In this document: one piece after another, positions 4,774 to 50,550 of the stretch
Numbering within the stretch: position 1 is the stretch's first letter
How the letters are laid out: each line of letters starts with the position of its first letter
IMG/VR virus record: IMGVR_UViG_3300020471_000004
Span: 124,001-188,000 of that record
Reading direction: 5' to 3' (one strand)
Length of the DNA: 64,000 bases
The notes under the pieces: generated by a model
Told to the model about the DNA's origin: nothing
The model's input: the letters and a program-made list of their open reading frames with translations, nothing else
Databases searched by the model: none
Made by a program: the position numbers and the translations under genes

Positions 4774-4811
4774 ACACCTAATTTTTAAACGTCATTATTT
4801 GGAGACTACTT

Positions 4812-5645: not shown

Positions 5646-5669
5646 CTTAAATAATTAACCGAGGTTTTT

Positions 5670-5864: not shown

Positions 5865-5865
5865 C

Positions 5866-5950
5866 TATCTTTAATACGTTGGTACAAAACAGTGGTGCTT
5901 GCCACCGCTGCTTTTTGTTATAATAGCTACATGTTGTGAAGAAGCACAGC
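5866..5950 (+). promoter_or_regulatory. Class-I promoter with leader hairpin
   Basis: GGTACAAAA 5881-5889, 29 nt, TGT-TATAAT 5919-5924, leader 5931-5950. Confidence 0.85.
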
Positions 5951-5982
5951 ACAATTTTTGACATTATTTGAGGAACCTATTT

Positions 5983-6651: not shown

Positions 6652-6661
6652 GGAAAAAAAA

Positions 6662-16869: not shown

Positions 16870-16878
16870 GGAATTACC

Positions 16879-24594: not shown

Positions 24595-24999
24595 ATGGTT
24601 TATATTATTAAACCTATAGGCAGTCTTTACGTTTCCTTACGTGACTTTTTGTCCAAAGCAAATGCGATAAAGAACCTTGATAAAAAGCTGGATGCTTTAA
24701 GAGTAGAGTTTGAAACCAACGGTCGAAGTCGAGAATGGTTCAAAGCTGTCCGTTCTATAGTGCTTGACGTTGCTCGTCACAGAAAAGCTCTTGAGCCTTA
24801 TACGACCTCAACGCTTGCTACCTTAATAAAGATAGTTGGCCCTAACACCGTGCTTAATACGTTGGTAGACGGCAGGTATTTGAATAGACAGGTAGCAGAT
24901 AACCTTCTGTCTGAATATAACGAAACATCTTACATGGTAGACAAGAAAGTAAAGGACTTGCGCCTAGCTAAGTGTATCAAGGGTAACTTTACTAAATAG
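24595..24999 (+). CDS. Hypothetical protein
   Basis: 134-aa ORF. Confidence 0.65.
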   Translation: MVYIIKPIGSLYVSLRDFLSKANAIKNLDKKLDALRVEFETNGRSREWFKAVRSIVLDVARHRKALEPYTTSTLATLIKIVGPNTVLNTLVDGRYLNRQVADNLLSEYNETSYMVDKKVKDLRLAKCIKGNFTK

Positions 25000-25042
25000 G
25001 TACAAAATAGACCATTACGCAGAACACAAATTTTGCTATAAT
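24984..25042 (+). promoter_or_regulatory. Class-I promoter
   Basis: TAACTTTACTAAATAGGTACAAAA 24984-25007, 29 nt, TGC-TATAAT 25037-25042; degenerate leader TTGTTGTCGCAGCAAAGCGCAGC. Confidence 0.8.
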
Positions 25043-25095
25043 GTAATTGTTGTCGCAGCAAAGCGCAGCAATCAAACAAACTTTCGGAGATACAA

Positions 25096-33934: not shown

Positions 33935-33943
33935 GGAAGTTTG

Positions 33944-35974
33944 ATGGCTTTACGAAAGAGAAAAACAACTACAGCCAAGACCTCAGCGAAGAAAGGCAAA
34001 AACAAAGCTGGTTATGATGAAGATAGCATTGACGTACAGGAAGGTCTAAAAGGTATTCGCCTTAACCCCGGTATGTATCTTGCTGCTCTGGGTAATCGAA
34101 TGGTGTTTCGAATGGTAAAAGAAGTTGTAGATAATTTCTATGACGAATACGCCGCTGGTCGAAACACAGGGGGTGAGGTAATCTACGACCCCAAGACTAA
34201 CGCCTGTATTGTAGCTGACTATGCTCAAGGTATTCCTGTCGGATTAAAACAGACTGAACACGAAGGTAAGGTAAGTACACTTACTCTTATTCTTACAAAA
34301 GTTCACGCAGGTGGTAAGTTTAATGACAAGGCTTACAAAACCTCAAGTGGTACGCACGGTGTTGGTGTTTCTGCGGTAAACGCTGTTTCAAAAGTTCTTG
34401 AAGTATGGACACACCGTGATGGAAGTTGGTACTATCAAAAGTTTAACACTGGTATCCCTGCTGCTAAAGTCAAGAAACTTTCTAAGACGCCTACCGAATT
34501 CAAAAAGATGGGCCTCGCAGAAAAGCGTTTTGACAAGTATGGTACTATTATTCGATTTGTTCCTGACCAGACGGTTGTGTCCGAAGACGCTGCTCGTGGT
34601 AGTCGTAAAACAGAAGACAAACTTACCAAAGCGATTCTGGAAGAAAGCACTACAGAGCGTTGGTTAAAAACGCTTGCCTTATTGAACAAAAATTTTAAGA
34701 TCACATTCAATCATATTGGTAGTGAACCTAAAGTTTTCTTAAACAAGAAAGGTCTAGATTTCCTTATTAGTGAACGCATCAAAGAAAACGAGCTAGGTGC
34801 AGTTATCAAAAAACCTTTTTCGTATTCAGACGGCGAACTTGATTGTGTTGTTACTTGGACTGACCAGCCTGATGACGTACACTTTACATCGTTTGTTAAC
34901 TCGTCTGCTACTTTATCTCATGGTACTCACGTTGAAGGTTTCCGTTCGGCGTTACAAAAAGCAATTAAGCCTCACTTAACAGAGCGCGATAAAAAAGCCA
35001 AGTTCACGGTACATGACCTAATGATTGGTGCGTGTGGTATTCTAAACTTCCGAATGAACTCTGCTATATATGATTCACAGGTCAAAGATAAGTTGGTATC
35101 TAAAGTATCAAAAATCATTGACGATAAACTTAGCGAACCCTTATTGCTGTGGTTTAAAGAAAATCCTCGCGTTGCTAAAAACATAATCAAGAAGGCTACT
35201 ACTGCAAACAGTGCCCGTGAATCTTTGAAAAAGGTAATGCGTTCACTAACAGAAGTTAGAAAAGGCAGTCGTGGTAAGTTGCCTGAAAACCTTACTGAGG
35301 CCCCTAACGTTAAGCCTGATAAAAGAGAAATCTATATAGTAGAAGGTGACTCGGCAGGCGGTACAGCTAAAGACGCCCGTAATGATAACCAAGAGATATT
35401 AAGATTATCTGGTAAGCCTTTGAATGCGCTTAAAGCAGGACTGGACAAATTGCTTACCAGCAAGGCAATAGTTAATATTATTATATCGCTGGGTATTGAC
35501 CCTAGTTCTCTTGATGTTAACTCAGAGAATCCTAAGTTTAGTGTTGATAAGTTGCGTTGTCGTGACGTTATACTTTTAAGTGATCCTGACCCTGATGGTT
35601 CACACATCAATACTCTTATTCTTAGTCTATTCTTCCGACTTATGCCAGACCTTATTAAGCAAGGTCGTTTGTATGTTATTGAAGCCAAGCTGTACAGTGC
35701 TTTGTATAAAGGTAAACTTTACACAGGCGATACGTTTGAAGAATGTTATTCTCAAATGCCCCAGACACCTGATGCTAAACGTAGCGTTATACGCATCAAA
35801 GGTTGGGGAGAAATTAACGCAGATATGATGGACCCTATTGCGTTTGATCCAGAGTTACGCACTATACGCCGTATTACTTGGGTCGATGACCCGGATAAAA
35901 TACAACACTTCCGAAACATTGCTGCTGAATCAAGCGCAAGCCGACGAGAACTTCTAGGTCTCAAGGAAGCTTAA
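33944..35974 (+). CDS. gyrB: Type IIA DNA topoisomerase subunit B (GyrB/ParE-like)
   Basis: GHKL motifs EVVDN, DYAQGIP, HAGGKF, GTHGVGVSAVNA; TOPRIM VEGDSAGG, GKPLN, DPDPDGSHI; RIKGWGE. Confidence 0.95.
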   Translation: MALRKRKTTTAKTSAKKGKNKAGYDEDSIDVQEGLKGIRLNPGMYLAALGNRMVFRMVKEVVDNFYDEYAAGRNTGGEVIYDPKTNACIVADYAQGIPVGLKQTEHEGKVSTLTLILTKVHAGGKFNDKAYKTSSGTHGVGVSAVNAVSKVLEVWTHRDGSWYYQKFNTGIPAAKVKKLSKTPTEFKKMGLAEKRFDKYGTIIRFVPDQTVVSEDAARGSRKTEDKLTKAILEESTTERWLKTLALLNKNFKITFNHIGSEPKVFLNKKGLDFLISERIKENELGAVIKKPFSYSDGELDCVVTWTDQPDDVHFTSFVNSSATLSHGTHVEGFRSALQKAIKPHLTERDKKAKFTVHDLMIGACGILNFRMNSAIYDSQVKDKLVSKVSKIIDDKLSEPLLLWFKENPRVAKNIIKKATTANSARESLKKVMRSLTEVRKGSRGKLPENLTEAPNVKPDKREIYIVEGDSAGGTAKDARNDNQEILRLSGKPLNALKAGLDKLLTSKAIVNIIISLGIDPSSLDVNSENPKFSVDKLRCRDVILLSDPDPDGSHINTLILSLFFRLMPDLIKQGRLYVIEAKLYSALYKGKLYTGDTFEECYSQMPQTPDAKRSVIRIKGWGEINADMMDPIAFDPELRTIRRITWVDDPDKIQHFRNIAAESSASRRELLGLKEA

Positions 35975-36970: not shown

Positions 36971-37027
36971 CTTTATTAAGTCGGTACAAAACAGACTATA
37001 AACTTATACGTGTGTTTGTGTTATAAT
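36968..37027 (+). promoter_or_regulatory. Class-I promoter upstream of topoisomerase A
   Basis: TAACTTTATTAAGTCGGTACAAAA 36968-36991, 30 nt, TGT-TATAAT 37022-37027. Confidence 0.8.
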
Positions 37028-37064: not shown

Positions 37065-38672
37065 ATGAGAAAGAGAAAAGCTTCCTCAGATTCAGAAGAT
37101 ACCAAACGCCGTCTGGTGCGCAGACGAAAAACAGGCGTTACAAAATCTAAAACAAAAAAGAAATCTTTAGGTAAGCTTGCACAGAAAGCCGCTAAGCCTG
37201 ATTACAACACAAACATCGAAGGTGCAGATGAAATTACCTTGGATGATTTTGCTGGTGCAAGTCTTACACACTACGGATCATATGTTGTAGAAGAACGTGC
37301 TGTACCTGATTACCGCGATGGTCTTAAACCTGTTCACAGATACATACTTTGGGCAATGCATGACCTAGGTATCAATTCTAGATCAGGTTACAAAAAGTCA
37401 GCTCGTACTATTGGTGATGTTCTTGGTAAGTATCACCCGCATGGTGACCAGTCTGCTTACGGTGCTATGTCTACTCTTGTTAACTACAAGTTGAATCCTC
37501 AACTTGTTCAAGGTCAAGGTAACTGGGGTACTCCTGTAGACCCTCATGCTGCAATGCGTTATACCGAGGCCCGATTAAGTGCGTTCAGTGATATTTTCTT
37601 GCTAGATAAGCACTACTTGAAAACTGTTCCTAAAATCGATAACTTTGACCAAACTTTAAAGGTACCGCTGTATTTGCCTGCTACGTTACCTACACTTATG
37701 ATAACAGGTAGCTCTGGAATCGGTTTTGGTATAGCTTCATCGAATCCTCCGTTTGACGTAGACGGTGTGTACAAGATGGCTGTAAGTAGCTTGAAGGCGT
37801 TTGCTGCTAAAAAGAAAGTTACTTATAAAACCTGCATGAAGAACCTGACTATTGATTATGGTTTCGGGTGTACGCAGGTTAGTGGTGATGATGAAATGGA
37901 AGACCTGTTCAAGACAGGTAAAGCTTCTATTAAATTTGTACCTGAAATAAAAGTTGACCCCAAGACCAAGACTATCGAGATAGTTTCATTCGCGCCTGGC
38001 TTTAGAAGTGTAAGTGGTATACAGAAAAAGCTAGACAAGATTGCAGGCTGGGACGGTGTTAGCAGAGCTGGTGACAACTCAGGTGCTAAAAACAAAAAAG
38101 CAGGAAAGCTAGGTGCATATTATTATGTAACTGCTTCGCGTGGAACATCTGAGCAGGCTTTGTATGACTTGGCTGACCGAGTATACAAGGAAGTTACAGG
38201 CTCTGAGAGTTACGATTTAGGATTTACTGTTCGTAACCATGAAGATCGTAACCAGTTTATAAAAAGCGGCTACCCTGCTTACTTTAATAACTGGGCCAAG
38301 TATCGATTCATACTTGAGCACAAAGCTATTGCTATACATATCGAAGAGCGAAAGGCAGCTATTGCCTTGCTTGAATTAAAAGTGTTGGCAGTAGACAAGC
38401 GTGATATAATTATGCAGGTTCTTAAATCTAAAACAAAGGACTTAGATGCTACGCTTGCTAAGAAACTAAGAATACCTCTTGAAGATGCCAAGACTATTCT
38501 GAACCTACAGACTAGACGACTAGCAGCTTTAGAGAAACCTCAACTTCTGGCAGAGATTAAAGACCTCAAGAGTCAGATACGAGAGTTACAAAAGGATGAT
38601 GCAAATCCTTTGAAACGAATCTTGCGAATCACCAAGGAACAGTATGATACGTACCGCAAGCGTATCAAATAA
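37065..38672 (+). CDS. gyrA: Type IIA DNA topoisomerase subunit A (GyrA/ParC-like), lacking the C-terminal beta-pinwheel
   Basis: RAVPDYRDGLKPVHR, KKSARTIGDVLGKYHPHGD, AAMRYTEARL (catalytic Y166); ends at 535 aa. Confidence 0.95.
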   Translation: MRKRKASSDSEDTKRRLVRRRKTGVTKSKTKKKSLGKLAQKAAKPDYNTNIEGADEITLDDFAGASLTHYGSYVVEERAVPDYRDGLKPVHRYILWAMHDLGINSRSGYKKSARTIGDVLGKYHPHGDQSAYGAMSTLVNYKLNPQLVQGQGNWGTPVDPHAAMRYTEARLSAFSDIFLLDKHYLKTVPKIDNFDQTLKVPLYLPATLPTLMITGSSGIGFGIASSNPPFDVDGVYKMAVSSLKAFAAKKKVTYKTCMKNLTIDYGFGCTQVSGDDEMEDLFKTGKASIKFVPEIKVDPKTKTIEIVSFAPGFRSVSGIQKKLDKIAGWDGVSRAGDNSGAKNKKAGKLGAYYYVTASRGTSEQALYDLADRVYKEVTGSESYDLGFTVRNHEDRNQFIKSGYPAYFNNWAKYRFILEHKAIAIHIEERKAAIALLELKVLAVDKRDIIMQVLKSKTKDLDATLAKKLRIPLEDAKTILNLQTRRLAALEKPQLLAEIKDLKSQIRELQKDDANPLKRILRITKEQYDTYRKRIK

Positions 38673-40195: not shown

Positions 40196-40775
40196 AAACA
40201 AAGCTAGTGAAAATAAACTCCCGCCTGAGGAGAACGGGGAGTTCACTAGATGCTGTATATGTTTTGGATGGACGCGAAACATCCACTGGCATCATACAGT
40301 ACCTCAAGCTTTAGGTGGAAAGGAAAGCTTGCAGATACCGATAGACGGGAATTGTCATACGACCTTACACGCAAAATCAGAAGCTGTCGTATCGTACTTA
40401 AAAGGAAATCGGACTGAACCACCTGGGAGATTTTGGGATAAGTGGGAATCAGAGCAAAGGGCTGAACCTTACCTACAGATATTAGTTCAAGCTATGTTAG
40501 ATCCTCCCGTAGAGGACGGCGATAAAAAAATTAAGCTTGGGCAACTTGAGGTAGACCTAGTTACAAGGGAACTATTAACAAGACTTAAACTAGATTTGCC
40601 TGGTGTTACTAATATCACCCAAACGTTACATTACTGCATACAATATACATTACAAAATCAAGGGTACAAACATGAAACTGATCACAACAAATCTACCGGT
40701 AAAAGAGATAGTAACAGGTCACCTAACTTGCGGTGGGTGCGCGGGACTAAACGTAGAAAATCTAGTCGGCGGTAA
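40188..40775 (+). CDS. HNH endonuclease-family protein
   Basis: CCIC...HWHHTVPQALGG...DGNCHTTLH. Confidence 0.75.
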   Translation: MSKNKASENKLPPEENGEFTRCCICFGWTRNIHWHHTVPQALGGKESLQIPIDGNCHTTLHAKSEAVVSYLKGNRTEPPGRFWDKWESEQRAEPYLQILVQAMLDPPVEDGDKKIKLGQLEVDLVTRELLTRLKLDLPGVTNITQTLHYCIQYTLQNQGYKHETDHNKSTGKRDSNRSPNLRWVRGTKRRKSSRR

Positions 40776-41553
40776 AGATTTAAAAAGTTGTTCAGAGTTA
40801 GGTAAACTGGAGACCTCTAAAGCGTGTCCGAAGTTCCAGCAAGACCCTACACAAATCAGAGACTTATTGAGCGAAGACTTTGAAGATGGTGTTCGAGAGA
40901 TTGCTGACGTTATGAAGCAGATGAATCCTCGGCAACTTAAAGCAATGGCAGGCATGTTCTTGAATGAAGTACGAACGAGAAAGAGTAAGTTTTTTGCCTG
41001 GCAACCTGTTATTGTTAGATTCAGAGGAACCGCTAGTTCAAACTATATGTCAAACTTTATGACTGCGCGTGTGGTGAACGCGGATAAAGATACAGTACGT
41101 TTAACAAGTGACGATGGTAAAACAGTTCTGCGTTATGAAAATACAGGCGATACAGGCCCTAGTATTTATAGCGTGGCAAACTTTGCACCGTTAAAAGAAA
41201 CGATGATTGAGAAAGGCAAACGCGTTGACCCTAGTGACAGAGCAACACCTAAACGTTTGCGTCCTCTTGATCATAAAGATGTAGACTTCGAGCTTAACAC
41301 CGATGGTTTAAACGGCCACGTATCAAGCATTGGTAAAGTTGTTAAGTCTAACAAAGTTGCAAGGCGCGCCAAGAACGATAGCAACTTATTCGACCTTACT
41401 AAAATCGCACAGCAGATTGACGGCGGTACTGCTAACTACATGGTGCAAGATGAAGACTCTGGTGAGTATCAAATTGCAGCAAACAAGTATACAAAAGGCG
41501 TCAAGCGTAGACGCAAAGGAAGCAGTGAGGTTGAACTAGGGGACTTCGAATAA
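40672..41553 (+). CDS. Hypothetical protein with N-terminal Cys cluster
   Basis: AAGGG before ATG 40672; CGGC...C...CPKF; basic C-terminus. Confidence 0.75.
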   Translation: MKLITTNLPVKEIVTGHLTCGGCAGLNVENLVGGKDLKSCSELGKLETSKACPKFQQDPTQIRDLLSEDFEDGVREIADVMKQMNPRQLKAMAGMFLNEVRTRKSKFFAWQPVIVRFRGTASSNYMSNFMTARVVNADKDTVRLTSDDGKTVLRYENTGDTGPSIYSVANFAPLKETMIEKGKRVDPSDRATPKRLRPLDHKDVDFELNTDGLNGHVSSIGKVVKSNKVARRAKNDSNLFDLTKIAQQIDGGTANYMVQDEDSGEYQIAANKYTKGVKRRRKGSSEVELGDFE

Positions 41554-41555
41554 AA

Positions 41556-42713
41556 ATGACTCACTACAAAAGCTTATTTGATCACATATCGGATTTGCTG
41601 GAGCTTAAACCTAGAACGCCTGAGTTTTATCAGGCGTTTGTATTCACTCTTGAGCATGTGTGTTTACAAACCTCTATAAAAGAGTTCCACGATAACTTAT
41701 CTACTGTGGTCAATTTCAAAAAATTAAAAAGTGGTCTTACAGCAAGCAAGTTCAGATTAACAATCTCTAAATCAGGTTACGTTATTTTACGCTTGCGTTT
41801 TTATTCTGTTTATATGTGTTTAACACGAGGGGCATCATCTGAGGATTTTGATTATTGGCAACACCAGTATTCAATTGATAGGAAGGACAGAGTTTTATTA
41901 GAGCGCTTACATAAACAGCGTTTTAGCGGACCTAGTCTTAAAACAAAAGTAGGTAAAAAATTCAAGCAGAAAGAGATGTTTAGTGCTGCTTCGGTAGAGA
42001 ATGTTATAACAGAGTTCGGCATAATGCTGCCTGATGTTAAACGCTTTATCAAGATGGTAATAAACAAACGTCTTCGGTTTATTCTGCGCACCTACAATAT
42101 GACTAGGGACGAGTTTATCAGTGAACTAATGTTTAGTGCGGTAAAAGCACATTACAAATCTAAGCCTAATGATTACACCCTAGAGAAATCTACTAACATA
42201 GTTAGAAGAAGTATCGATAACGCGGCGGTAAATATCATTAACGCTTATACCACTACTAAGCGTGAGCGCCTTATAAACGAAGGACAAGATTCACAAGGAC
42301 ATAACGTCTTTACTCTTAGAGTTGTTTCTGAGAATCAGATGCGCTTAAAGGATATGTCAGGCGAAGACCTAGATTTATCTTACGATAGCATGTTCAGTTC
42401 TGCTTTAAGAATTAAAGAAGAAAAATTAAAAGACATTAATTTTAGTGTTGACCAGCTTATCAGAAAGTTCGGGTATCGCTCTAGAAGAGGACGCCTGTTA
42501 ACCGCTTTCTTTAAGCAGGATTGTGTGCGTTTCAACCGGTGGTTAGTGAATAACAAATACCTAAGAAGCGAAACAAAAACAACACAAGAATTTATGGATT
42601 CGAAAACCAGGGAAGAATTTATTAAAATTCTCGCAGTGTATCTGGATACTACGCCTGAGCAAATTAAAGACAAAGCGTTACCGAGTATGGCTAAGGCACT
42701 TGCGCTAATATAA
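41556..42713 (+). CDS. Putative divergent sigma70-like transcription factor
   Basis: Region-2-like TRDEFISELMFSAVKAH...IVRRSIDNAAVNIINAY; C-terminal HTH-like TREEFIKILAVYLDTTPEQIK. Confidence 0.45.
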   Translation: MTHYKSLFDHISDLLELKPRTPEFYQAFVFTLEHVCLQTSIKEFHDNLSTVVNFKKLKSGLTASKFRLTISKSGYVILRLRFYSVYMCLTRGASSEDFDYWQHQYSIDRKDRVLLERLHKQRFSGPSLKTKVGKKFKQKEMFSAASVENVITEFGIMLPDVKRFIKMVINKRLRFILRTYNMTRDEFISELMFSAVKAHYKSKPNDYTLEKSTNIVRRSIDNAAVNIINAYTTTKRERLINEGQDSQGHNVFTLRVVSENQMRLKDMSGEDLDLSYDSMFSSALRIKEEKLKDINFSVDQLIRKFGYRSRRGRLLTAFFKQDCVRFNRWLVNNKYLRSETKTTQEFMDSKTREEFIKILAVYLDTTPEQIKDKALPSMAKALALI

Positions 42714-42723
42714 AGGAAAGACA

Positions 42724-43197
42724 ATGACTACTGAAATGCTTGCAGAAAAACCACGACCGAGTATACTTTACCCCCATCAACTAGAGGCTCTTTTCTTTTT
42801 AACGTTAGATGAACCTTTAGTTGCGTCTGATCTTCCGAGCCCAGGTCGGCGTTCGGAAGACACTACTGACCCTAAAATTGCTCAAGCAAGACTTTGTTTG
42901 TGGATGACGTATCACCTTATCAAGAATGATACCACTAACTCTATTGCTGATACTAAAATCATTTGGTGGATAAAAAGAAACTACCATATGGAAAGTAGTA
43001 TGATTGTAGCCTGTTTAAAAGGTTTAGAGTCAATCTTTGAGTGCGTTAAATCATTCAGCTACAACAACGATAAAAAGTGTAAAACAAGGTATACTGTTAA
43101 TCGTTGTGATTCTTCTAACTTCGACTTATGGTGTGAAGATTTCGAGAAGAAGAACAAGAATATACTCTTTGTTAAGAGTAAGCTGGTAGCGAAATAG
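42724..43197 (+). CDS. Hypothetical protein upstream of the helicase
   Basis: 157 aa; AAGGA RBS. Confidence 0.7.
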   Translation: MTTEMLAEKPRPSILYPHQLEALFFLTLDEPLVASDLPSPGRRSEDTTDPKIAQARLCLWMTYHLIKNDTTNSIADTKIIWWIKRNYHMESSMIVACLKGLESIFECVKSFSYNNDKKCKTRYTVNRCDSSNFDLWCEDFEKKNKNILFVKSKLVAK

Positions 43198-43203
43198 GTA
43201 ACT

Positions 43204-44736
43204 ATGGAAATAAACTCTATTGATGCAGAATTGCAGTTTTTAAAGACTGTAACAAATACTAAAATACCAAAGCAGAAGCGTTTAGAGTTTTTAGGTAAAG
43301 TAAACATACATACTTTTCACCATGAATATACGCAACAGGCGTACAAGCGAATACTTAGCTTGGTTCAGAACCGAAATCATTTACTTGATTGGGGTGAGTT
43401 AAAAACTGACCAAGCTATGGATCGCGATGCTCGTGACCTGTTTGAAGATACAGAAGTACGCTCTGCTAAAGGTGCAAAAAGCGTTCAAAAGCTTATTGAA
43501 GACCTAGACGAATTTCGTAAACGCAGACAGGTATTCGAGTTAATATCTGAAAGTGCTTCAAGTTTTGACCAAGACAAAATCGATATTGATCAAGTACTGG
43601 ATAACATCCGTAATAATATCGGAAAGATTGAAGCAAACACTATCGAAGAAGAGACTATGTGGACGTTCGGTGTTGATGATAACGCCGACGAAATCATAGA
43701 CCGTATTATCAATAACCCTAGTGAAGAGCTGTACAAAACAGGCTTCAAGGAATATGATGAACGTAACGGCGGTCTTCCTACTACTGGTGTAATGATTATG
43801 GCAGCTACCACCTCTGGTGGTAAGTCTGCCGTTTCAATGAACTTGGAAAAGAACTTGGCAGTCCTTAACCCTAACATGAGTGCTACTAAAGTTACTCTAG
43901 AAATGAGTGAGGAACAGGAAGGTAAGCGTGTTGCTTCTATGGTATCAGGTGTACCCCTAGCTAAATTCAAACGTAACCAGTTGTCTGATCGTGAAATCAA
44001 AAAGATTAAAAACGATATGGATGCCTGGCGTAAACAGCTTAGAGCGAATAACAGCCGATTCAGTTATGTGTCTGGTAAAAAGTCTCGTACTATAGACCAG
44101 TTACTTGCTTGGCTTATTCCTTATGCTTTCAAAGTAATAATCATTGACTATATATCTTTGTTAGAAGGTGTTGATGATGATAACCAATGGCGTATGCTTA
44201 GTGCTATTGCTCGTAAGTGTAAGGTATTCGGCGCAGAGCACAATTGCTTGGTAATACTGCTTGCACAGCTGGACACAGAGTCTAGTAAGTTACGTTACTC
44301 TAAAGGTATTAAAGAACACGCGGACGTAATGTGGAAATGGAACTATGCAGATGAAGAGGTTCGTGCAACGCATATTATCAATATTCAAATCGACAAAGCC
44401 CGTGACGGAGAGCTGTTCGACATGCCTGTGCATGAAGACTTTGCCGTTATGCGGATCTCTGACGAAATCGATGACGAATCGAAACAAGCCTATGAAGAGC
44501 TTAAAAATAGTCGCAACAAGCGCAAGAAGAAAAAAGATTCCCAAGACGGGGACAGCGGGCGAGACGAGCGTTCTGAAAGAGGCAATAAGCGCCGTAAAAA
44601 TAGAGCGGAAGATGATTCCGATTCCAGACGTTCTAAGCGAAGATCAAAAAATAGAGATAGAGAAGAATCTGAAACAAGCTCTAGATCTTCACGTAGAAAG
44701 AAATCTTCGTCAAACGATGACTTGATATTAGGTTAA
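43204..44736 (+). CDS. dnaB: DnaB-like replicative helicase with charged C-terminal tail
   Basis: Walker A ATTSGGKS, TLEM, Walker B IIIDYI, LAQL, RYSKGIKEHAD, IDKARDG. Confidence 0.9.
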   Translation: MEINSIDAELQFLKTVTNTKIPKQKRLEFLGKVNIHTFHHEYTQQAYKRILSLVQNRNHLLDWGELKTDQAMDRDARDLFEDTEVRSAKGAKSVQKLIEDLDEFRKRRQVFELISESASSFDQDKIDIDQVLDNIRNNIGKIEANTIEEETMWTFGVDDNADEIIDRIINNPSEELYKTGFKEYDERNGGLPTTGVMIMAATTSGGKSAVSMNLEKNLAVLNPNMSATKVTLEMSEEQEGKRVASMVSGVPLAKFKRNQLSDREIKKIKNDMDAWRKQLRANNSRFSYVSGKKSRTIDQLLAWLIPYAFKVIIIDYISLLEGVDDDNQWRMLSAIARKCKVFGAEHNCLVILLAQLDTESSKLRYSKGIKEHADVMWKWNYADEEVRATHIINIQIDKARDGELFDMPVHEDFAVMRISDEIDDESKQAYEELKNSRNKRKKKKDSQDGDSGRDERSERGNKRRKNRAEDDSDSRRSKRRSKNRDREESETSSRSSRRKKSSSNDDLILG

Positions 44737-44737: not shown

Positions 44738-45595
44738 ATGGACGACAATAATCCTTACGGCTACCTACAAGAAGACGGTCCTTTAAAAGACGTTCCGTAT
44801 AGTGTGATACATCGCTTTATACAGAGTCGTCCTCCTGGGTTCCTTGAAATGAACACTGTTCCTAAAGGCATGGACAATACTGTTTCTTACGTAGATGCAT
44901 TGCCAGTCATCGTAGAAGACAATGCTGTTGTGTACGTTGACGAACAAAACAAAAAGCTAATAGAAGGCCTCTTAGCAAACAGTACTCCTAAAGAAGACGC
45001 TTATCTTAATCTTAATGAGATACGCAGTCGTATAGAGACTCGCAAGTCTACTCACCAAAGATCTAGCATAGCACCTAAGCCTAGTTCTTTGAGGGAGGAG
45101 TCACCTAACGACACCGCGGTAGAGAACGTTATACCTATAGAGAAGTCTGACGTTCAAAAAAGCTTTGATGCTACCGAGATACTAAGCAAACAAATGGGAG
45201 ACCTAAGCGTAGAGCATTTGAACCTTATACTTAGCTTTGACAATGCTTCTAGTTATCTAGAGGCATTTGCTAAGGATGCTTTAGGCATTCAAGGTGAAAT
45301 AAGCGTAGACGAGCATCCTTTTAATTTCATTAGACAGATGTGTAGTGTGAACCTAGTAAGTTCCTACGCAGATAAACTAGCTATGCCTGATGAATACAAA
45401 AAGTACTTTATGGAAAAGACCATAGACTACTTTGCAGGACTAGCTCAACGTGAATCCGATGCTGCTTTAAAGATGGAACTTCTACGCCGCACAAACAATT
45501 CCCAACGGTCTAAAGGTACAGTGAGTTCAGAACGATATGACGATACCGAAACACCTAGTTCCGCACACGGTGCTATTGTAAAGCGTAATAAATGA
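44738..45595 (+). CDS. Hypothetical protein upstream of terL
   Basis: 285 aa; ATGA overlap with terL. Confidence 0.75.
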   Translation: MDDNNPYGYLQEDGPLKDVPYSVIHRFIQSRPPGFLEMNTVPKGMDNTVSYVDALPVIVEDNAVVYVDEQNKKLIEGLLANSTPKEDAYLNLNEIRSRIETRKSTHQRSSIAPKPSSLREESPNDTAVENVIPIEKSDVQKSFDATEILSKQMGDLSVEHLNLILSFDNASSYLEAFAKDALGIQGEISVDEHPFNFIRQMCSVNLVSSYADKLAMPDEYKKYFMEKTIDYFAGLAQRESDAALKMELLRRTNNSQRSKGTVSSERYDDTETPSSAHGAIVKRNK

Positions 45596-47799
45596 GAAAG
45601 GTACGAACTAAAAAGCCTGCTTCGTCTGGCGAAACCAAGCCGAGACGAAAAATCAAAAGACGTACAAAGAAAACCCTTGCAGAATCTCCTCAGGCTGCCG
45701 ATTTCCTAAAAGAACTTATGGATCTTGGCGCTGATTCAGGAGGTCCTGCTGAAAACTTAGATTTTTTAGAAGACAATTCCGACTACAATCCCTTAAACGA
45801 TTCTGACGGCGTTGACATTGTAGGTATGGTTGATGAAGCTATAGGTCAAGAAGGGTTAGTAGCTCCTGACTTAAAGATAGATGACTCTAGCTGCCCAGAG
45901 GCACCTAATGTTGTTGACTGGCTTCTTAAAGATGAATTTCTAGGTTGCGAACCTCCCTATTTAGAGCAAGCACTTATATGTGTTAAGCTATTTGCCGAAT
46001 ACTGTCCTCACTGCTCTGATACCGAGTGGATGGAGACTGAGAACCATGAACCTCAAGAAGGTCTCGGTGCATTACTAGAAAAAGTGACCATGTTTAATTT
46101 TGGTGTGTGTCCTAGTTGCGGTACACACCGCAGTGATGCAATTGCAGAAGGAGATCTAAATTTCTATAACGAGCTTGCGTGTCTTGCAGGTCAACGTAGT
46201 GGTAAATCAATTGTTACCGCTATGGCTTCTACTTATATTACTCACCGAATCCTCAAAATGCAAAAGCCTACCGAAGTATTCCGCGTAGGTAAAGGTCAGA
46301 TTCTTCATGGTACATTTGTTGCACTTACTCAAGGACAAGCTAAGGACACTTTGTGGGAACCTTTCTACGGCTATCTTCTTGAAAGCCCTTGGTTTAAGAA
46401 ATATCATGCACTTCTTCGCCATTATGAAAAGAAATACCATCAGGAATTTTTCAAACTCAAAGATACATTTGTGCTTTATAGGCATCGTGCTCTTACTGTG
46501 TATCCTGCAGGTCCTGATAAACGTATACTCCGTGGTAGGACTCGTATTTTTGGCGCAATAGATGAAATCGGTTGGTTCGATAACAACAAGGGAACCAACA
46601 AGGTAAAGATAGATGCTAACGGTGTTTATGAAGCAATGGTACGTTCATTGGCTACAGTTCGTTCAAGCGAAGAGCGACTAGTAGCAATGAAGTACGACCA
46701 AGCAATTACTGCCTATATGCTTAACATAAGTTCACCTAGCTCTATTCGCGATAAGATTTGCGAATTGGTTAGGCAGGCTCAAAACAGTGTCAAGACCTTA
46801 GGTGTCCATGCCCCTACTTGGAAGATGAACCCTAATATCACAAGACAAAGCGGCTTCCTGTTAGAAGAATACCGAAAAGATCCTATTACTGCACAGCGAG
46901 ATTACGGTGCAGAACCTCCTCTAAGTGCTAACGCTTTTATCAATAACAAAGATATGATACAAGAAGCACTTAATCCCAAGACTCGAAACCCTATCAAGTA
47001 CAGACTTGAAGAAATCAAGATTGGTAAAGAGAAGTACCGTTATGCGAGTGTTGATAAAATCCGAACATGCGCTCGCGCAAGTATGCTTGCTCTCGATGCA
47101 GGTTTTACTAATAACAGTTTCAGCCTGGTTGTAGGTACACTAGTAGATGGCGTTCCTACTATCGATATATGTGTAGAAGTAATTCCTTTACCTGGTATAC
47201 CTCTTCACTATTCAATGATTTACGAAGAACTGATAAAGCCTATTATTGAGGCTCGTAACGTAAAGATTGTACTTGCGGATAGGTGGAACTCTATCAAACT
47301 ACTACAAGACATGGCTTTCGATTACCAGCACGTTGAGCTTGTGACTCGTCAGTACAGTTTGAAATATCACGATTTTTGGTCTGTTAAGGTTGCCTTTGAA
47401 CAGTACACCTTTGTTATTCCTAATCTAGATAAAGGTCAAGACCTAGATGAAGTTCTAAAAGATACTCTTGAAGAATATCCTAGATGCTTCGAGTACAAAC
47501 CTGTTGCTCACTTTGCTTTGCAGATACTTACTGTACAGGATACAGGTCGTACAGTTACTAAAGGTGAAGGTGATTTGACCGATGATTTGTGGCGTGCCGC
47601 ATGTTTGTTCTATTGGGGATCACAAGAAGACGAGTATATAGAGATACTTACCAAGCCTGTAGAAACTCAGCAGAAAACAATAGGCGCATTAGGTAAAGCA
47701 CTTTTGGGATCATCAAGTTCAAGTACAGGTGTAACAGGCACAAGTATTTCAAGTTCAAGCACCGGCGGTGTGATAGGTCTTACAATGAGGAGAAAGTAA
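45592..47799 (+). CDS. terL: Terminase large subunit
   Basis: Walker A AGQRSGKS, Walker B GAIDEIGW, coupling motif ISSP, RNase H-like ALDAG and DDLWRA; CPHC/CPSC Zn motifs. Confidence 0.9.
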   Translation: MRKVRTKKPASSGETKPRRKIKRRTKKTLAESPQAADFLKELMDLGADSGGPAENLDFLEDNSDYNPLNDSDGVDIVGMVDEAIGQEGLVAPDLKIDDSSCPEAPNVVDWLLKDEFLGCEPPYLEQALICVKLFAEYCPHCSDTEWMETENHEPQEGLGALLEKVTMFNFGVCPSCGTHRSDAIAEGDLNFYNELACLAGQRSGKSIVTAMASTYITHRILKMQKPTEVFRVGKGQILHGTFVALTQGQAKDTLWEPFYGYLLESPWFKKYHALLRHYEKKYHQEFFKLKDTFVLYRHRALTVYPAGPDKRILRGRTRIFGAIDEIGWFDNNKGTNKVKIDANGVYEAMVRSLATVRSSEERLVAMKYDQAITAYMLNISSPSSIRDKICELVRQAQNSVKTLGVHAPTWKMNPNITRQSGFLLEEYRKDPITAQRDYGAEPPLSANAFINNKDMIQEALNPKTRNPIKYRLEEIKIGKEKYRYASVDKIRTCARASMLALDAGFTNNSFSLVVGTLVDGVPTIDICVEVIPLPGIPLHYSMIYEELIKPIIEARNVKIVLADRWNSIKLLQDMAFDYQHVELVTRQYSLKYHDFWSVKVAFEQYTFVIPNLDKGQDLDEVLKDTLEEYPRCFEYKPVAHFALQILTVQDTGRTVTKGEGDLTDDLWRAACLFYWGSQEDEYIEILTKPVETQQKTIGALGKALLGSSSSSTGVTGTSISSSSTGGVIGLTMRRK

Positions 47800-48428
47800 T
47801 GCAAGTATCAAAACACCCTTCTGTAGAAATTGTACCTCAAGAATTGTTTAACAATACTTTAATCAGGTATATGGATTTTGATATTGACGATGTTGAAACA
47901 CTTATTGTATTAGCAGAGTCTAATTGGAAATGGGTAGACTCTAAAGGTTGGCACTCCGACAAAAGACCTTTGGAGTATATCTCTCTTATAGCAAGTGAGG
48001 TATACGAAGTATGGACTGCGGTACACAATTATGAAGACAGCGCTCACGAACTAGAGCTGGCAGATATATTTCTAAGAGTTACTGACTTTATTAAAGAGCT
48101 ATCTAGTCTTACACAAGGTCAACTTACTCTCAAAGATGCTTTGTTCACAGGTAATGTTTTAGATAACCGCTTTAAGCTTCAACTTAACCAAGGCGTTACT
48201 CTTGACGGACTATTGTTGTGTATGTATCACAAGCTAGCAAGTACTGTAAACTACTTTAGAGACCATAAAATTTCTCCTGACCATTACTTGGATATAGAAA
48301 GTGCTTTTAACCAAGTTCTGTATCTAACTTTTGTAGCTATGAAACATCTACAGGTCTCCGATGTAATTGAGCCTATAAAGACTAAACTGGACATTAACAG
48401 TACCAGAAAAGTCACCAGGCTCAAATGA
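47799..48428 (+). CDS. MazG-like nucleoside triphosphate pyrophosphohydrolase
   Basis: ISLIASEVYEVW...ELELADIFLRVTD all-alpha NTP-PPase signature. Confidence 0.7.
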   Translation: MQVSKHPSVEIVPQELFNNTLIRYMDFDIDDVETLIVLAESNWKWVDSKGWHSDKRPLEYISLIASEVYEVWTAVHNYEDSAHELELADIFLRVTDFIKELSSLTQGQLTLKDALFTGNVLDNRFKLQLNQGVTLDGLLLCMYHKLASTVNYFRDHKISPDHYLDIESAFNQVLYLTFVAMKHLQVSDVIEPIKTKLDINSTRKVTRLK

Positions 48429-48457
48429 TAATTTAATGAAAAACAAGGAGAACAACT

Positions 48458-48679
48458 ATGTCTAAAGCTTTTTTCAACCCGTTAGACCACGTAGAAGCTA
48501 GTACGGTATCAGCTCCCCAGCAAGGTATAGAGTCTAACTCTAAAGCTATGGTCAATGATGATCCTAGTAAATGTCCCAAATGCAGCGGCGCCATGAGTGT
48601 AAGTTCTATTTTAGATAGACAGGAATCTGTTTACTACTGTGGTAAATGCCGTGTAACTAACCCTATGTTGGCTGAATAA
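48458..48679 (+). CDS. Small Zn-ribbon protein
   Basis: CPKC...CGKC; AAGGAG RBS. Confidence 0.7.
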   Translation: MSKAFFNPLDHVEASTVSAPQQGIESNSKAMVNDDPSKCPKCSGAMSVSSILDRQESVYYCGKCRVTNPMLAE

Positions 48680-50550
48680 TGATAAGCATTAAAAACCGTT
48701 ACAAGTCTACCGAGACTAGACGGCAACTTGTTACCCACGGAAAGCGCAATCATAGACTTAATGAAAGCGAAACTTTTCGAGAGCGTGACATTGACCGTCT
48801 ACAGTCTTTGAGCAAGAGTCAAGGTCTGGCGTCTTTATCTGATGCTACACCTAACGTTGCATCGATGCCTTTGGGTATAGATACAGATCCTTTAATGGAC
48901 GGAATGGACTACGATCTTCAAGACAAAGTCCTGTTTAACGTGTATCGAGACATGTACTGGCACGACCCTGTGTGCGGTTCTGCTGTAGACATGTTTAGTA
49001 GTCTGCCGTTCAGCGAGTTCAGCATAGGCGGAGCTAGCGACAAGTACCTAGACCCGTACCGTGAAGCAATCGAAGTGCTTAACTTGCGTAATATATTTCC
49101 TGAAATTGCCACTGACTATAAGGTTACAGGCGGCTTTTGTGGATCTCTTTTGCACAACAGAGAAAACAAAAGATTCATTGACCTTATGTGTCACAGAATG
49201 GATAGTCTTGAAATAAATCCGCTATTCGCCTACGGACAAGACCCTATTCTTATCTTAGAAATGGACAGACAGCTTAAAAGAACTTTAAGCATGGACAGTC
49301 CTCGAATAGAGCGATTAAAGAAAAGCGTAGGTGAAGATTTCTTTAACAAGCTTCTTACTGAAAAGCTTGAACTGGATCCTATCGGTACTTTGTACGTTCC
49401 TCGAAAGACCTTTTCAAACTCGTTGCCTACCAGTTACTTTAAACGGGTGCTGCCTATATGGCTTATAGAAAAGAACTTGTACCGAGGTACTCTTGTAGAG
49501 TCAGGACGTAGACAGCGCGGTATCATGCACCTTCAATTAGGTGACGGTGATATGTGGGAACCTAGTGAAGATGACTTTAACCAGATAGCTGCTATGTTTA
49601 ACAACGCCGATGCAGACCCAATCGGTGCTATAGTTGCAACTCGTTTAGGTGTAGCTGTAGACGAACTCAGACAAGGCGGTGACTTCTGGAAAGTTACAGA
49701 CCTTTGGAACGAAACCACATACGTTAAGATGCGAGCGCTAGGTATATCGGAAGCTTTTCTTTCTGGTGACGCCAGCTATGCAAATATGGAAGGCTCTTTA
49801 ACAGTATTCGTAGAGTCTATGCGTACTTTCAGAGACAGTCTTACTCGCCGTATATTTTATTCGAAAGTATTTCCACTAGTATCTATGATGCAAGGTAATA
49901 CAATCAATAAGCGCGGTAAGATAATTCAAAAGTCTAATCTTATGGACCAAGACTCCGAAGATATTTTGCGTACCATGAATGACGGAAGTAAGTTGTTTAT
50001 TCCTACGGTGCACTGGGCTAAACAGTTGAAACCAGAGGCAGACCAGACTTATATGGAAATGCTTCGCCAGCTTCAAGAGCTAGGTGTACCTGTTCCATTA
50101 AGAGCCCTTGCTGCTGCAGGTGGTTTTAACCTCGACTCGTTGATCAACAACCGCGAAGAAGACCTTGCTTTGCAGAAACAGATCAATGACTACAATACAG
50201 AGTTAGATAAGCTTAAACCTGCAGGTGCAGAAGGTGAAGAAGACGGAGGTTTCGGAGCATTTGCAAGCGCTGACCGACCGAATGGATTCAAGAGCCGAGT
50301 GTTTGACGGTTACAAGCGTAGACCTACTTTAGGCGAACGTGACTTCGGAGAGTCTAGTGAGATATACACTGTGTCTAAATCAGGACGCAAAAAGCAACAC
50401 GTATTCCGACAGGCACATGCTAATGAGGTTGCTAACAACAACATTCATAAAGCTATGCGCAGCTTAGACCCTAAGAAACCTACAACTGTTCACTTATTTT
50501 CTAGCACAAGTACTAGTAAGAAATCCAAGAAGAATGGAAAAACTATTTGA
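48679..50550 (+). CDS. Probable portal protein
   Basis: 623 aa close to terL; YRDMYWHDPVCGSAVD and ALGISEAFL segments resemble portal folds. Confidence 0.65.
   Translation: MISIKNRYKSTETRRQLVTHGKRNHRLNESETFRERDIDRLQSLSKSQGLASLSDATPNVASMPLGIDTDPLMDGMDYDLQDKVLFNVYRDMYWHDPVCGSAVDMFSSLPFSEFSIGGASDKYLDPYREAIEVLNLRNIFPEIATDYKVTGGFCGSLLHNRENKRFIDLMCHRMDSLEINPLFAYGQDPILILEMDRQLKRTLSMDSPRIERLKKSVGEDFFNKLLTEKLELDPIGTLYVPRKTFSNSLPTSYFKRVLPIWLIEKNLYRGTLVESGRRQRGIMHLQLGDGDMWEPSEDDFNQIAAMFNNADADPIGAIVATRLGVAVDELRQGGDFWKVTDLWNETTYVKMRALGISEAFLSGDASYANMEGSLTVFVESMRTFRDSLTRRIFYSKVFPLVSMMQGNTINKRGKIIQKSNLMDQDSEDILRTMNDGSKLFIPTVHWAKQLKPEADQTYMEMLRQLQELGVPVPLRALAAAGGFNLDSLINNREEDLALQKQINDYNTELDKLKPAGAEGEEDGGFGAFASADRPNGFKSRVFDGYKRRPTLGERDFGESSEIYTVSKSGRKKQHVFRQAHANEVANNNIHKAMRSLDPKKPTTVHLFSSTSTSKKSKKNGKTI

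What the first reader, a model, noticed from the sequence alone, without database searches (positions are those of the whole stretch)
41556..42713. Unrecognised sigma-like factor upstream of helicase and terminase
Seen in sequence: residues from about 165 to 235 (FIKMVINKRLRFILRTYNMTRDEFISELMFSAVKAHYKSKP...STNIVRRSIDNAAVNIINAYTTTKRER) follow the sigma region-2 pattern (D.edl.qe....a.ka...f......sty....i.N...d..r). The C-terminus resembles a region-4 HTH. Inference: a highly diverged phage sigma that could read the AAAACTGTAAAC class.
Basis: inference. Interest (0 to 1): 0.6.

Follow-up and report, generated by a model that had tools for sequence, protein, structure and literature searches.

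The report
Diverged sigma-like factor of a marine jumbo phage
This 385-residue protein of a marine jumbo phage very probably belongs to a highly diverged branch of the bacterial sigma-factor family and likely redirects the host RNA polymerase to phage promoters, but a weak form of this idea was already published for its PaBG orthologue and nothing has been tested at the bench.

Summary
Pfam finds nothing, and its PHROG family (19229) has unknown function.

**Context.** The phage (232.7 kb, PaBG/NCTB-like) shows no RNA polymerase of its own. It carries a second, more canonical sigma (PaBG gp118-like) outside the window.

**Prior art.** The PaBG orthologue, gp112, was already called a "possible" sigma (Evseev 2020).

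**Promoters.** The genome has an early host-type class, the AAAACTGTAAA class (before replication genes) and a candidate late class. Which sigma reads which class remains open.

**Verdict.** A diverged phage sigma is likely (~0.6). Interest is moderate.

The parts
41556..42713 (+). Gene for P0001, 385 aa; member of phrog_19229 (unknown function); orthologue of PaBG gp112 and NCTB BN7874_090
   Evidence: ORF; phrog_19229 E 2.4e-58; orthologues with conserved gene order; 415 representatives at 50% clustering
41556..41975 (+). N-terminal all-helical domain, residues 1-140, family-specific (conserved R67, D111); no known relative
   Evidence: AF2 pLDDT >95 over most of it; no atlas feature hit; no similarity to the N-terminus of the gp118 family; not resolved by the fold searches, which the sigma-2 domain dominated
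41985..42269 (+). Sigma domain-2-like core, residues 144-238 (helices 144-172, 174-180, 184-202, 209-232), ending in the conserved K235-R236-x-R238
42270..42338 (+). Beta-hairpin (residues 239-254) followed by the conserved S258-E-N-Q261 motif; an insertion not seen in canonical sigmas
   Evidence: DSSP of the model; conservation S258 0.84, Q261 0.89
42339..42380 (+). Acidic, low-confidence linker (about residues 262-275), in the position of the sigma 3.2 / ECF inter-domain linker
   Evidence: pLDDT 53-56 in this block; position inferred from the domain order
42381..42710 (+). C-terminal helical HTH-type domain, residues 276-385, tentatively sigma domain-4-like (conserved G320, F326, L330)
36983..37027 (+). 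Early, host-sigma70-type promoter candidate (GGTACAAAACAG, 27 nt, TG-T-TATAAT), 38 nt upstream of the topo IV-A-like gene; the nearest strong promoter candidate upstream of P0001
   Evidence: GGTACAAAAYA occurs 10 times in the window against 0.10 expected; no + strand terminator predicted between it and P0001
33339..33350 (+). Copy of the AAAACTGTAAA(C/T) 'middle' motif at the head of the topoisomerase II cluster, upstream of P0001
38737..38744 (+). Copy of TAATTTAA (candidate late motif), 93 nt upstream of the 452-aa ORF that starts the tightly packed gene run ending in P0001
   Evidence: its count is not above chance, so the support is position and strand only
42724..43197 (+). Small ORF (157 aa) between P0001 and DnaB; a small ORF occupies the same position in NCTB and PaBG; function unknown (possible partner or helicase loader)
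   Evidence: no family hit
43204..44736 (+). DnaB-like replicative helicase
   Evidence: PF03796 E 1.5e-26, phrog_19
45592..47799 (+). Terminase large subunit
   Evidence: phrog_17415 E 2e-255

Best explanation
P0001 is a highly diverged member of the sigma-70 superfamily encoded by a marine PaBG/NCTB-like jumbo phage in which no RNA polymerase genes were detected.

Shown here (by prediction and comparison): it has a sigma domain-2-like core (residues ~144-238), then a beta-hairpin with a conserved SENQ motif, an acidic flexible linker and a C-terminal HTH domain that looks most like sigma domain 4. A family-specific 140-residue helical domain sits in front.

Inferred: it binds the host RNAP core through the usual contacts (sigma-2 on the beta-prime clamp helices, the C-terminal domain on the beta flap), displaces or competes with host sigma-70, and directs one temporal class of phage promoters. 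It would work alongside the phage's second, more canonical sigma (gp118-like, genome 116697-117749, outside the window).

More speculative: the gene lies behind an early host-type promoter, whereas the gp118-like sigma gene lies directly behind AAAACTGTAAA promoters. The simplest cascade is therefore host sigma-70 for early genes including P0001, then P0001 for the AAAACTGTAAA(C/T)A class (replication genes and the gp118-like sigma), then gp118-like sigma for late structural genes (TAATTTAA class). The reverse assignment of the two sigmas is not excluded.
For: - **ESM Atlas shape search.** Clusters that are 100% PF04542 align on residues 140-262.
- **Language-model feature search.** The best named cluster is viral and 100% Sigma70_r2 (score 0.95, 171 shared features); 19 of 30 hits carry Sigma70_r2.
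- **Sequence.** 20 of 115 members hit TIGR02937 sigma70-ECF (best E 2.6e-6, residues 140-293 against model positions 6-124) and 12 hit TIGR02985. Sigma70_r2 is the Pfam family hit by most members. hhalign to the gp118 sigma family gives P 0.0013 in register.
- **C-terminal domain.** Sigma-4 domains lead the VIA list.
- **Context.** No RNAP or canonical Sigma70_r2 was found in the genome. This clade is reported to use host RNAP with phage sigmas (PMC7824862). The family co-occurs with the gp118-type sigma in the same phages (70 against 83 records, same host genera).
- **Literature.** PaBG gp112 is called a 'possible sigma' on HHpred 97.2% (PMC7412058).
- **Promoters.** Three classes, with the positions of the two sigma genes relative to them.
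- **Expression.** Contigs of a marine metatranscriptome match the gene with no differences.
Against: - P0001 itself hits no sigma model in Pfam or NCBIfam. The best family member scores 27.2 bits against a curated cut-off of 42.9.
- PDB sequence and profile searches found nothing. Foldseek found nothing significant for the whole model or the C-terminal domain.
- In the alignment, the conserved tryptophan of RpoE region 2.3/2.4 (W73) is replaced in P0001 by I215 (Y in 62% of the family).
- Sigma-4 is not detectable by sequence.
- No evidence of binding to RNAP. Transcription of the gene in nature is not proven, because DNA carry-over in the RNA library is possible.
- In NCTB the orthologue lies behind AAACTGTAAA copies, which weakens the proposed order of the cascade.
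Confidence: 0.6

Rival explanations
1. It is a sigma-fold protein that is not an initiation factor. It could be a regulator or decoy that uses a sigma-like surface to bind RNAP, host sigma-70 or an anti-sigma-like partner, in the way PhyR-type sigma mimics or sigma-appropriating phage factors do. It would modulate host or phage transcription without recognising promoters itself.
For: Homology to sigma-2 is supported, but the residues used for -10 melting are not conserved. Sigma-4 is only tentative. The phage already has a more canonical sigma. The extra N-terminal domain and the hairpin/SENQ insertion are unlike working sigmas.
Against: The region 2.4-like N222/N226 and the basic K-R-x-R tail are among the most conserved positions, as expected for a DNA-contacting sigma. 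The sigma2-linker-HTH order of a complete group-4-type sigma is kept. Three promoter classes call for more than one phage specificity factor.
Confidence: 0.15
2. It is a replication protein: an origin-binding or helicase-loading factor that works with the DnaB-like helicase encoded just downstream. It would use its HTH domain to bind DNA, with the small 157-aa ORF as the loader (an arrangement like SPP1 G38P-G39P-G40P; that comparison is from general knowledge).
Against: Sigma factors, not replication proteins, dominate every structure and feature search and the sequence scans. The whole core block of these phages keeps its gene order, so adjacency says little. The more distant member P0139 has no DnaB beside it. 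No AAA+ or known loader or initiator domain was found.
Confidence: 0.1
3. The sigma resemblance is a chance convergence of a small helical bundle, and the protein has an unrelated, unknown function.
Against: Four methods of different kinds (VIA-align on PDB, the atlas shape search, language-model features, and HMM scans of 20 separate members) all point to the same family, on the same domain and in the same register. Published HHpred gave 97% for the orthologue.
Confidence: 0.05

Closest known systems
PaBG gp112 (PaBG_00112, AGS81997.1) and the rest of phrog_19229
   Same: Orthologue: 27% identity over 96% of the length, with the same neighbours (topoisomerase fragment, small ORF, DnaB, terminase, portal). 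Evseev et al. 2020 noted a weak HHpred link to sigma factors / SigmaE.
   Different: GenBank annotates it as hypothetical, and it has never been tested. The present protein comes from a marine, uncultured, 40% GC phage and is much closer to phage NCTB (58%).
Group 4 (ECF) sigma factors, e.g. E. coli RpoE, M. tuberculosis SigH/SigE/SigL
   Same: Best structural matches for the central domain. The two-domain order is the same: sigma-2, flexible linker, HTH domain. Equivalents of region 2.2 D-x-x-Q-E and region 2.4 R-I-A-x-N-x-x-x-N align in register.
   Different: It is twice as long, with a 140-residue N-terminal domain and a beta-hairpin/SENQ insertion after sigma-2. RpoE W73 is replaced by I215. 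It scores below every curated sigma threshold, and sigma-4 is undetectable by sequence.
PaBG gp118-type phage sigma (RpoD-like), present in this genome at 116697-117749
   Same: Co-resident in the same phage clade. Length and layout are similar (N-terminal extension, sigma-2 near residue 150-250, C-terminal domain). The sigma-2 regions align at P 0.0013.
   Different: The gp118 family is recognisably sigma: many members carry PF04542, and its profile hits RpoD/SigA region 2 in the PDB at E 3e-4. The N- and C-terminal domains show no similarity to P0001. They are separate families, at most ancient paralogues.
T4 gp55 (late sigma)
   Same: Functional analogy only: a very diverged phage sigma for host RNAP that reads a single -10-type block (TATAAATA in T4, from general knowledge; see PMC2988020). 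The phage motifs found here are also single blocks with no -35 partner.
   Different: No detectable sequence relation (P 0.29). gp55 is 185 aa with no sigma-4 and depends on gp33 and the sliding clamp (general knowledge), whereas P0001 carries its own C-terminal HTH domain.
Sigma-like subunits of jumbo-phage RNA polymerases (AR9 gp226; phiKZ gp68)
   Different: They serve phage-encoded multisubunit RNAPs. No RNAP genes were found in this genome, and its clade is described as RNAP-less.

Membership tests
Sigma-70 superfamily (Pfam Sigma70_r2/r4; NCBIfam TIGR02937) | Sigma domain 2 fold (helical bundle of regions 2.1-2.4) | tested here: met
Sigma-70 superfamily (Pfam Sigma70_r2/r4; NCBIfam TIGR02937) | Sequence match to a curated sigma model above its curated cut-off | tested here: not met
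   P0001 hits no sigma model. The best family member, P0035, scores 27.2 bits against a cut-off of 42.9. In all, 20 of 115 members give sub-threshold TIGR02937 hits and 3 of 115 give Pfam Sigma70_r2 hits.
Sigma-70 superfamily (Pfam Sigma70_r2/r4; NCBIfam TIGR02937) | Region 2.2 core-binding determinant that contacts the beta-prime clamp helices | tested here: inconclusive
   E186/S189/E190 align with RpoE D48/Q51/E52; position 186 is D or E in 93% of the family. The complex prediction with E. coli beta-prime 235-335 gave no verdict.
Sigma-70 superfamily (Pfam Sigma70_r2/r4; NCBIfam TIGR02937) | Region 2.3/2.4 residues for -10 recognition and melting (conserved aromatics; R-I-A-x-N motif) | tested here: inconclusive
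   R218, N222 and N226 align with RpoE R76, N80 and N84, and N222/N226 are 90-97% conserved. RpoE W73, however, aligns with I215 (Y in 62% of the family).
Sigma-70 superfamily (Pfam Sigma70_r2/r4; NCBIfam TIGR02937) | Sigma domain 4 (HTH that binds the -35 element and the beta flap) | tested here: inconclusive
Sigma-70 superfamily (Pfam Sigma70_r2/r4; NCBIfam TIGR02937) | Binds RNAP core and confers promoter-specific initiation | not testable with these tools
   Needs pull-down and in vitro transcription. The complex prediction returned no verdict.
phrog_19229 / PaBG gp112 family | Full-length match to the family profile, and orthologous position in the genome | tested here: met
   E 2.4e-58 over residues 6-378; conserved synteny with NCTB and PaBG.
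T4 gp55-type late sigma | Sequence similarity to gp55; minimal sigma-2-only architecture | tested here: not met
   hhalign P 0.29. P0001 has additional N- and C-terminal domains.
PaBG gp118-type phage sigma | Full-length similarity to the gp118 family | tested here: not met
   Only the sigma-2 cores align (P 0.0013); the N- and C-terminal domains are unrelated.
Replicative helicase loader / replication initiator (DnaC, lambda P, DnaA-type) | A recognisable loader or initiator domain (AAA+, DnaA_N, etc.) | tested here: not met
   No such Pfam, PHROG or NCBIfam hit. Only adjacency to DnaB supports it, and P0139 has no DnaB beside it.

The most novel reading that the evidence does not exclude
P0001 founds a widespread (at least 415 clusters at 50% identity) and so far unrecognised class of three-domain phage sigmas. 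It would be made early from a host-type promoter and would programme host RNAP to read a single-block, -35-less promoter, AAAACTGTAAA(C/T)A. That would switch on the replication genes and the phage's second sigma, giving a two-sigma cascade in RNAP-less jumbo phages. Its novel N-terminal domain and hairpin/SENQ insertion would supply functions that canonical sigmas lack, for example coupling to the replication machinery encoded next to it.
Probability: 0.22. Interest if true: 0.6.

Novelty: new variant of a known kind. Interest (0 to 1): 0.42.

Why it matters
PaBG/NCTB/Yoloswag-type jumbo phages infect Pseudomonas, Erwinia, Dickeya, Xanthomonas, Yersinia and, as shown here, unknown marine hosts. 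They are reported to carry no RNA polymerase, so their whole gene-expression programme must run through factors that re-aim the host enzyme.

If this family is a working second sigma, these phages run a sigma cascade like SPO1 or T4, but with proteins that current annotation pipelines miss. One conserved "hypothetical" core gene in at least 70 isolated phages and hundreds of metagenomic lineages would gain a function.

The three promoter classes found here give concrete templates for testing the idea. A sigma with an altered melting region, an extra N-terminal domain and a single-block promoter would also help in understanding how far sigma-2 can diverge and still open DNA.

It would not overturn any principle, since phage-encoded diverged sigmas are a known theme.

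Tried and rejected
- **Sequence and DNA searches that found nothing useful.** Pfam on P0001: no family. PDB sequence search with the single protein and with the 115-sequence profile: nothing meaningful. Megablast of the region against phage genomes: no match.
- **Foldseek.** Against the PDB, the whole model gave no hit at E <= 1e-3, although sigmaA/sigma70 chains were among the top rows at E ~0.5. The C-terminal domain gave only weak homeodomain rows. BFVD returned only the protein's own uncharacterised family.
- **Atlas feature search on the N-terminal domain:** no usable hit.
- **hhalign.** The family against E. coli RpoE gave P 0.13, which is not significant; only the register is informative. 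The RpoE homologue search returned only near-identical sequences, so that profile is shallow. The C-terminal domain against RpoE or gp118 gave nothing. T4 gp55 against either phage family gave nothing.
- **Complex prediction** of residues 141-262 with E. coli beta-prime 235-335: no verdict (score 0.27, mark 0.34, controls not run). This is evidence neither for nor against binding.
- **TAATTTAA as a late promoter.** Its count in the window is not above chance (5 against 8.6 expected). The reversed-pattern control is uninformative because the 9-mer reads the same backwards. Only position and strand support it: 25 of 27 copies are on the local gene strand, and 17 of 27 lie in the 7% of the genome that is intergenic.
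- **RNA evidence.** Only contigs of one metatranscriptome were available, so no starts, strand or expression level could be read, and DNA carry-over is possible.
Full report
**1. The observation**

The window holds an ATG-initiated ORF at 41556-42713 (+) of 385 residues, P0001. The preceding ORF stops at 41553, and an AGGGG lies about 11 nt before the ATG, so the start is plausible and probably translationally coupled.

The neighbours are as described:
- topoisomerase II/IV-like genes upstream (33941-35974, 37065-38672, 40603-41553);
- a small ORF (42724-43197);
- a DnaB-like helicase (43204-44736);
- the large terminase (45592-47799);
- a MazG-like pyrophosphatase and the portal.

**2. The genome**

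The window is part of a single 232,692-bp viral contig of about 40% GC. P0001 has homologues only in PaBG/NCTB/Yoloswag-type jumbo phages of Erwinia, Pseudomonas, Dickeya, Xanthomonas and Yersinia. There are 70 such records, all annotated 'hypothetical'. The best is phage NCTB at 58% identity, and PaBG is at 27%.

The contig recurs in marine, coral-reef and estuary metagenomes from 13 studies, so the host is an unknown marine bacterium.

Six-frame searches with Pfam RNAP beta and beta-prime domains and with Sigma70_r2 found nothing in the genome. Iyer et al. 2021 place PaBG and NCTB in a jumbo-phage subgroup that lacks an RNA polymerase and encodes sigma factors instead (PMC7824862).

**3. Prior knowledge**

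The PaBG orthologue is PaBG_00112, with the same gene order on both sides. Evseev et al. 2020 (PMC7412058) report:
- gene 118 as a confident sigma-70-type factor (HHpred 99.9%);
- gene 112 as 'possibly' a sigma, with low confidence (HHpred 97.2%, E 0.2; SigmaE 96.9%).

GenBank, Pfam (no hit) and PHROGs (phrog_19229, unknown function, E 2.4e-58) do not carry it. This genome also has the gp118 orthologue, at genome 116697-117749, next to SSB and RecA and just outside the window (36% identity).

**4. Is it a sigma homologue?**

*Family size.* A word-index search found only 8 close relatives. Because word search and family scans left the protein open, I ran the exhaustive profile search. It found 415 representatives (50% clustering) at E <= 1e-3 and 50 at E <= 1e-30, nearly all 340-400 residues long and matching end to end. 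This is a large, coherent family.

*Structure.* With 115 of these as the alignment, AlphaFold2 gave a confident model (mean pLDDT 91.9, pTM 0.69) with these parts:
- a helical N-terminal domain (1-140);
- a four-helix domain (144-232);
- a beta-hairpin (239-254);
- a low-confidence acidic linker (about 255-275);
- a helical C-terminal domain (276-385).

*Fold searches.* Foldseek on the whole model found nothing significant, although primary sigma chains were among its top rows. The exhaustive VIA-align search of 48,161 PDB representatives was clearer:
- The six best rows and about 21 of the best 50 are sigma factors or sigma-derived chains, all aligned on residues 148-240.

Two further libraries agree. 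The ESM Atlas shape search returned clusters that are 100% Sigma70_r2 on residues 140-262. The language-model feature search returned a viral Sigma70_r2 cluster as the best named hit (0.95, 171 shared features), with 19 of 30 hits carrying Sigma70_r2.

*Sequence.* P0001 itself hits no sigma model, but when the 115 members were scanned one by one:
- 20 hit NCBIfam TIGR02937 sigma70-ECF (best E 2.6e-6);
- 12 hit TIGR02985;
- single members hit SigX, a PG0214-type ECF sigma and PRK11924;
- no unrelated family recurred in comparable numbers (the next, PedR, has 7 members).

The matches fall on the central domain: P0035 residues 140-293 align to model positions 6-124 of 165, and P0048, P0084, P0062, P0071 and P0017 behave alike. 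All are below the curated cut-off (27.2 against 42.9 bits). In Pfam, Sigma70_r2 is the family hit by most members, but only 3.

Profile-profile comparison with the co-resident gp118 sigma family is weak but in register. (That family is itself confirmed as sigma: many members carry PF04542, and its profile hits RpoD/SigA region 2 in the PDB at E 3e-4.) The comparison gave P 0.007 for the full length and P 0.0013 for the domain alone. The alignment to RpoE is not significant (P 0.13) but uses the same register:
- E186/S189/E190 on RpoE D48/Q51/E52 (region 2.2);
- R218/N222/N226 on R76/N80/N84 (region 2.4).

The most conserved positions in the family are K172, L173, F175, N181, Y200, P204, N214, N222, N226, I228, K235, R236, R238, S258 and Q261. 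The conserved tryptophan of RpoE (W73) is I215 in P0001 and Y in 62% of the family. The melting and -10-reading surface is therefore altered.

*C-terminal domain.* Modelled alone it reached pLDDT 85. Its best VIA-align rows are sigma domain 4:
- SigA region 4 6ono_B, 63 of 69 residues aligned;
- sigmaA domain 4 4g6d_A, 61 of 62 residues aligned;
- SigL, SigC and SigD sigma-4 domains, sigma28, sigma32 and AlgU.

Homeodomains sit among these hits, and no Z exceeds 5. Foldseek finds nothing and there is no sequence signal. I call it an HTH domain that is probably sigma-4-like.

*N-terminal domain.* It has no detectable relative.

*Conclusion.* Homology of the central domain to sigma-2 is well supported (I put it near 0.85). 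The overall layout, sigma-2 then a flexible acidic linker then an HTH domain, is that of a group-4-type sigma with a phage-specific N-terminal domain and a hairpin/SENQ insertion.

**5. Does it act as a sigma?**

This is inference. A controlled complex prediction of the sigma-2-like domain with E. coli beta-prime clamp helices returned no verdict, so it counts neither way.

In favour:
- no polymerase was detected in the phage;
- the family co-occurs with the gp118-type sigma in essentially the same phages (70 against 83 records, same host genera);
- the DNA-facing region 2.4-like residues and the basic tail are the best-conserved part of the domain.

A marine metatranscriptome holds short contigs with no differences from the gene (41861-42012) and from two upstream genes. 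That is compatible with expression, but DNA carry-over cannot be excluded.

**6. Promoters**

AAAACTGTAAAC with up to one mismatch occurs 9 times in the window against 1.2 expected and 25 times in the genome. Most copies are intergenic, on the strand of the local genes, and 24-60 nt upstream of a start codon.

Aligned, the conserved block is AAAACTGTAAA(C/T)A, with no conserved -35-like partner. It precedes:
- two DNA-polymerase genes;
- an exonuclease;
- the topoisomerase II cluster;
- SSB;
- the cluster that contains the gp118-like sigma gene (genome 113510 and 115691).

I call this a replication or 'middle' class. The exact 10-mer occurs 21 times here, 16 times in NCTB and 5 times in PaBG, with 0 for the reversed control in each.

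I found two further classes:
- **Early class.** GGTACAAAACAG, 26-27 nt, then (TG)nTATAAT, a host sigma-70 extended -10 type. It has 11 intergenic copies, all on the + strand between genome 126.7 and 161.0 kb, among small ORFs. The upstream element occurs 10 times in the window against 0.10 expected, and the class is shared with NCTB.
- **Candidate late class.** TAATTTAA(T/A) lies in front of three tail-sheath paralogues, the tail tube, a Holliday-junction resolvase and the portal region. Its count is not above chance. It is supported only by strand (25 of 27 copies on the local gene strand) and by its intergenic location (17 of 27).

Three candidate elements lie upstream of P0001:
- an early-type promoter at window 36983-37027, 38 nt before the topo IV-A-like gene, with no + strand terminator predicted between it and P0001;
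- a TAATTTAA copy at 38737;
- a middle-type copy at 33339.

The gp118-like sigma gene has only middle-type copies close upstream. The simplest cascade is therefore: host sigma-70, then P0001, then the middle class (including the gp118-like sigma), then the late class.

In NCTB, however, AAACTGTAAA copies sit 30 nt before the gyrA-like gene and again before the 452-aa ORF orthologue (59383 and 60994). The P0001 orthologue there is behind middle-type copies. I give the specific pairing of P0001 with AAAACTGTAAA about one chance in three, conditional on it being a working sigma.

**7. Rivals**

- **A sigma-fold regulator or decoy rather than an initiation factor (0.15).** The altered melting residues and the extra domains allow it.
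- **An origin-binding or helicase-loading protein for the adjacent DnaB (0.10).** The order P0001 - small ORF - DnaB is conserved, and a ~20%-identical relative directly abuts DnaB. But a more distant member has no DnaB beside it, the whole core block of these phages keeps its gene order, and no search pointed to a replication family.
- **Chance resemblance (0.05).**

**8. Comparison and novelty**

It works like an alternative sigma of the ECF/group-4 layout. It fails the curated sequence thresholds of the sigma-70 family, and three defining features (core binding, melting residues, sigma-4) are inconclusive or untestable here. I therefore file it as a diverged variant of the sigma-70 superfamily, not as a member of any named sigma group. 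It is not related in sequence to T4 gp55, and beyond the sigma-2 core it is not related to the gp118 family.

Because the orthologue was already flagged, weakly, in 2020, and diverged phage sigmas are a familiar theme, interest is moderate. What this analysis adds:
- the size of the family;
- a confident three-domain model;
- convergent evidence from several methods;
- the three promoter classes, which make the question directly testable.

Noticed in passing
window 2772-37027 (+), e.g. 4704-4747, 5881-5924, 24999-25042, 36983-37027: A strong early-promoter class: GGTACAAAACAG, 26-27 nt, then (TG)nTATAAT, often preceded by TTATTAAGTC. There are 11 intergenic copies, all on the + strand, among small ORFs. 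The upstream element occurs 10 times against 0.10 expected, and the class is shared with phage NCTB. The conserved element at about -50 is not a standard -35 and could be a UP-like element or an activator site.
   Followed up: partly
window 4748-4785 and 5925-5962: Directly downstream of two early-type -10 boxes, the same ~25-nt sequence recurs (…ACATGTTGTGAAGAAGCACAGCACA…), with similar sequences near 25043 and 25529. It may be a conserved 5' leader or a small hairpin of early transcripts.
   Followed up: no
genome C1: 2373, 15501, 17170, 48769 (-); window 346, 38737, 48429 (+): TAATTTAA(T/A) lies in front of three tail-sheath paralogues, the tail tube, a Holliday-junction resolvase and the portal region, making it a candidate late promoter. 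Its count is not above chance; only strand (25 of 27 copies) and intergenic position support it.
   Followed up: partly
genome C1:116697-117749 (L003:2697-3749), outside the window: A second phage sigma, orthologue of PaBG gp118 (36% identity), next to SSB and RecA. The Pfam Sigma70_r2 six-frame scan of this genome missed it, but many relatives carry PF04542 and its family profile hits RpoD region 2 in the PDB.
   Followed up: partly
L003:7632-7707 (genome ~121632-121707): A tRNA-Met (CAT) gene just upstream of the window; there are no tRNA genes inside the window.
   Followed up: yes
genome C1:659-2314, 15511-17130, 47557-48765 (all -): Three separate tail-sheath paralogues (PHROGs 15433, 23, 12249). 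Evseev et al. described two sheath proteins as a hallmark of the PaBG group.
   Followed up: no
L015:369-3053 and 5653-6792 (metagenomic relative carrying P0090): In a distant relative, the topoisomerase IV-A-like gene carries an intein (Intein_splicing, LAGLIDADG). An IS605 OrfB/TnpB (Cas12f-like) gene is also inserted in the replication block.
   Followed up: no
window 31304-32350 (+): A 348-aa ORF just behind a middle-type motif, with repeated Arc-like / endonuclease VII-like PHROG matches (2-3 stretches). It may be a tandem ribbon-helix-helix or HNH-type DNA-binding protein.
   Followed up: no
window 42724-43197 (+): A 157-aa ORF with no family hit sits between P0001 and DnaB; NCTB and PaBG have a small ORF in the same position. 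It could be a partner of the sigma-like protein or the missing helicase loader.
   Followed up: no
whole window: The phage is marine and widespread: near-identical DNA occurs in marine, coral-reef, estuary, biofilm and brine metagenomes from 13 studies. All isolated relatives infect terrestrial or freshwater Gammaproteobacteria.
   Followed up: partly
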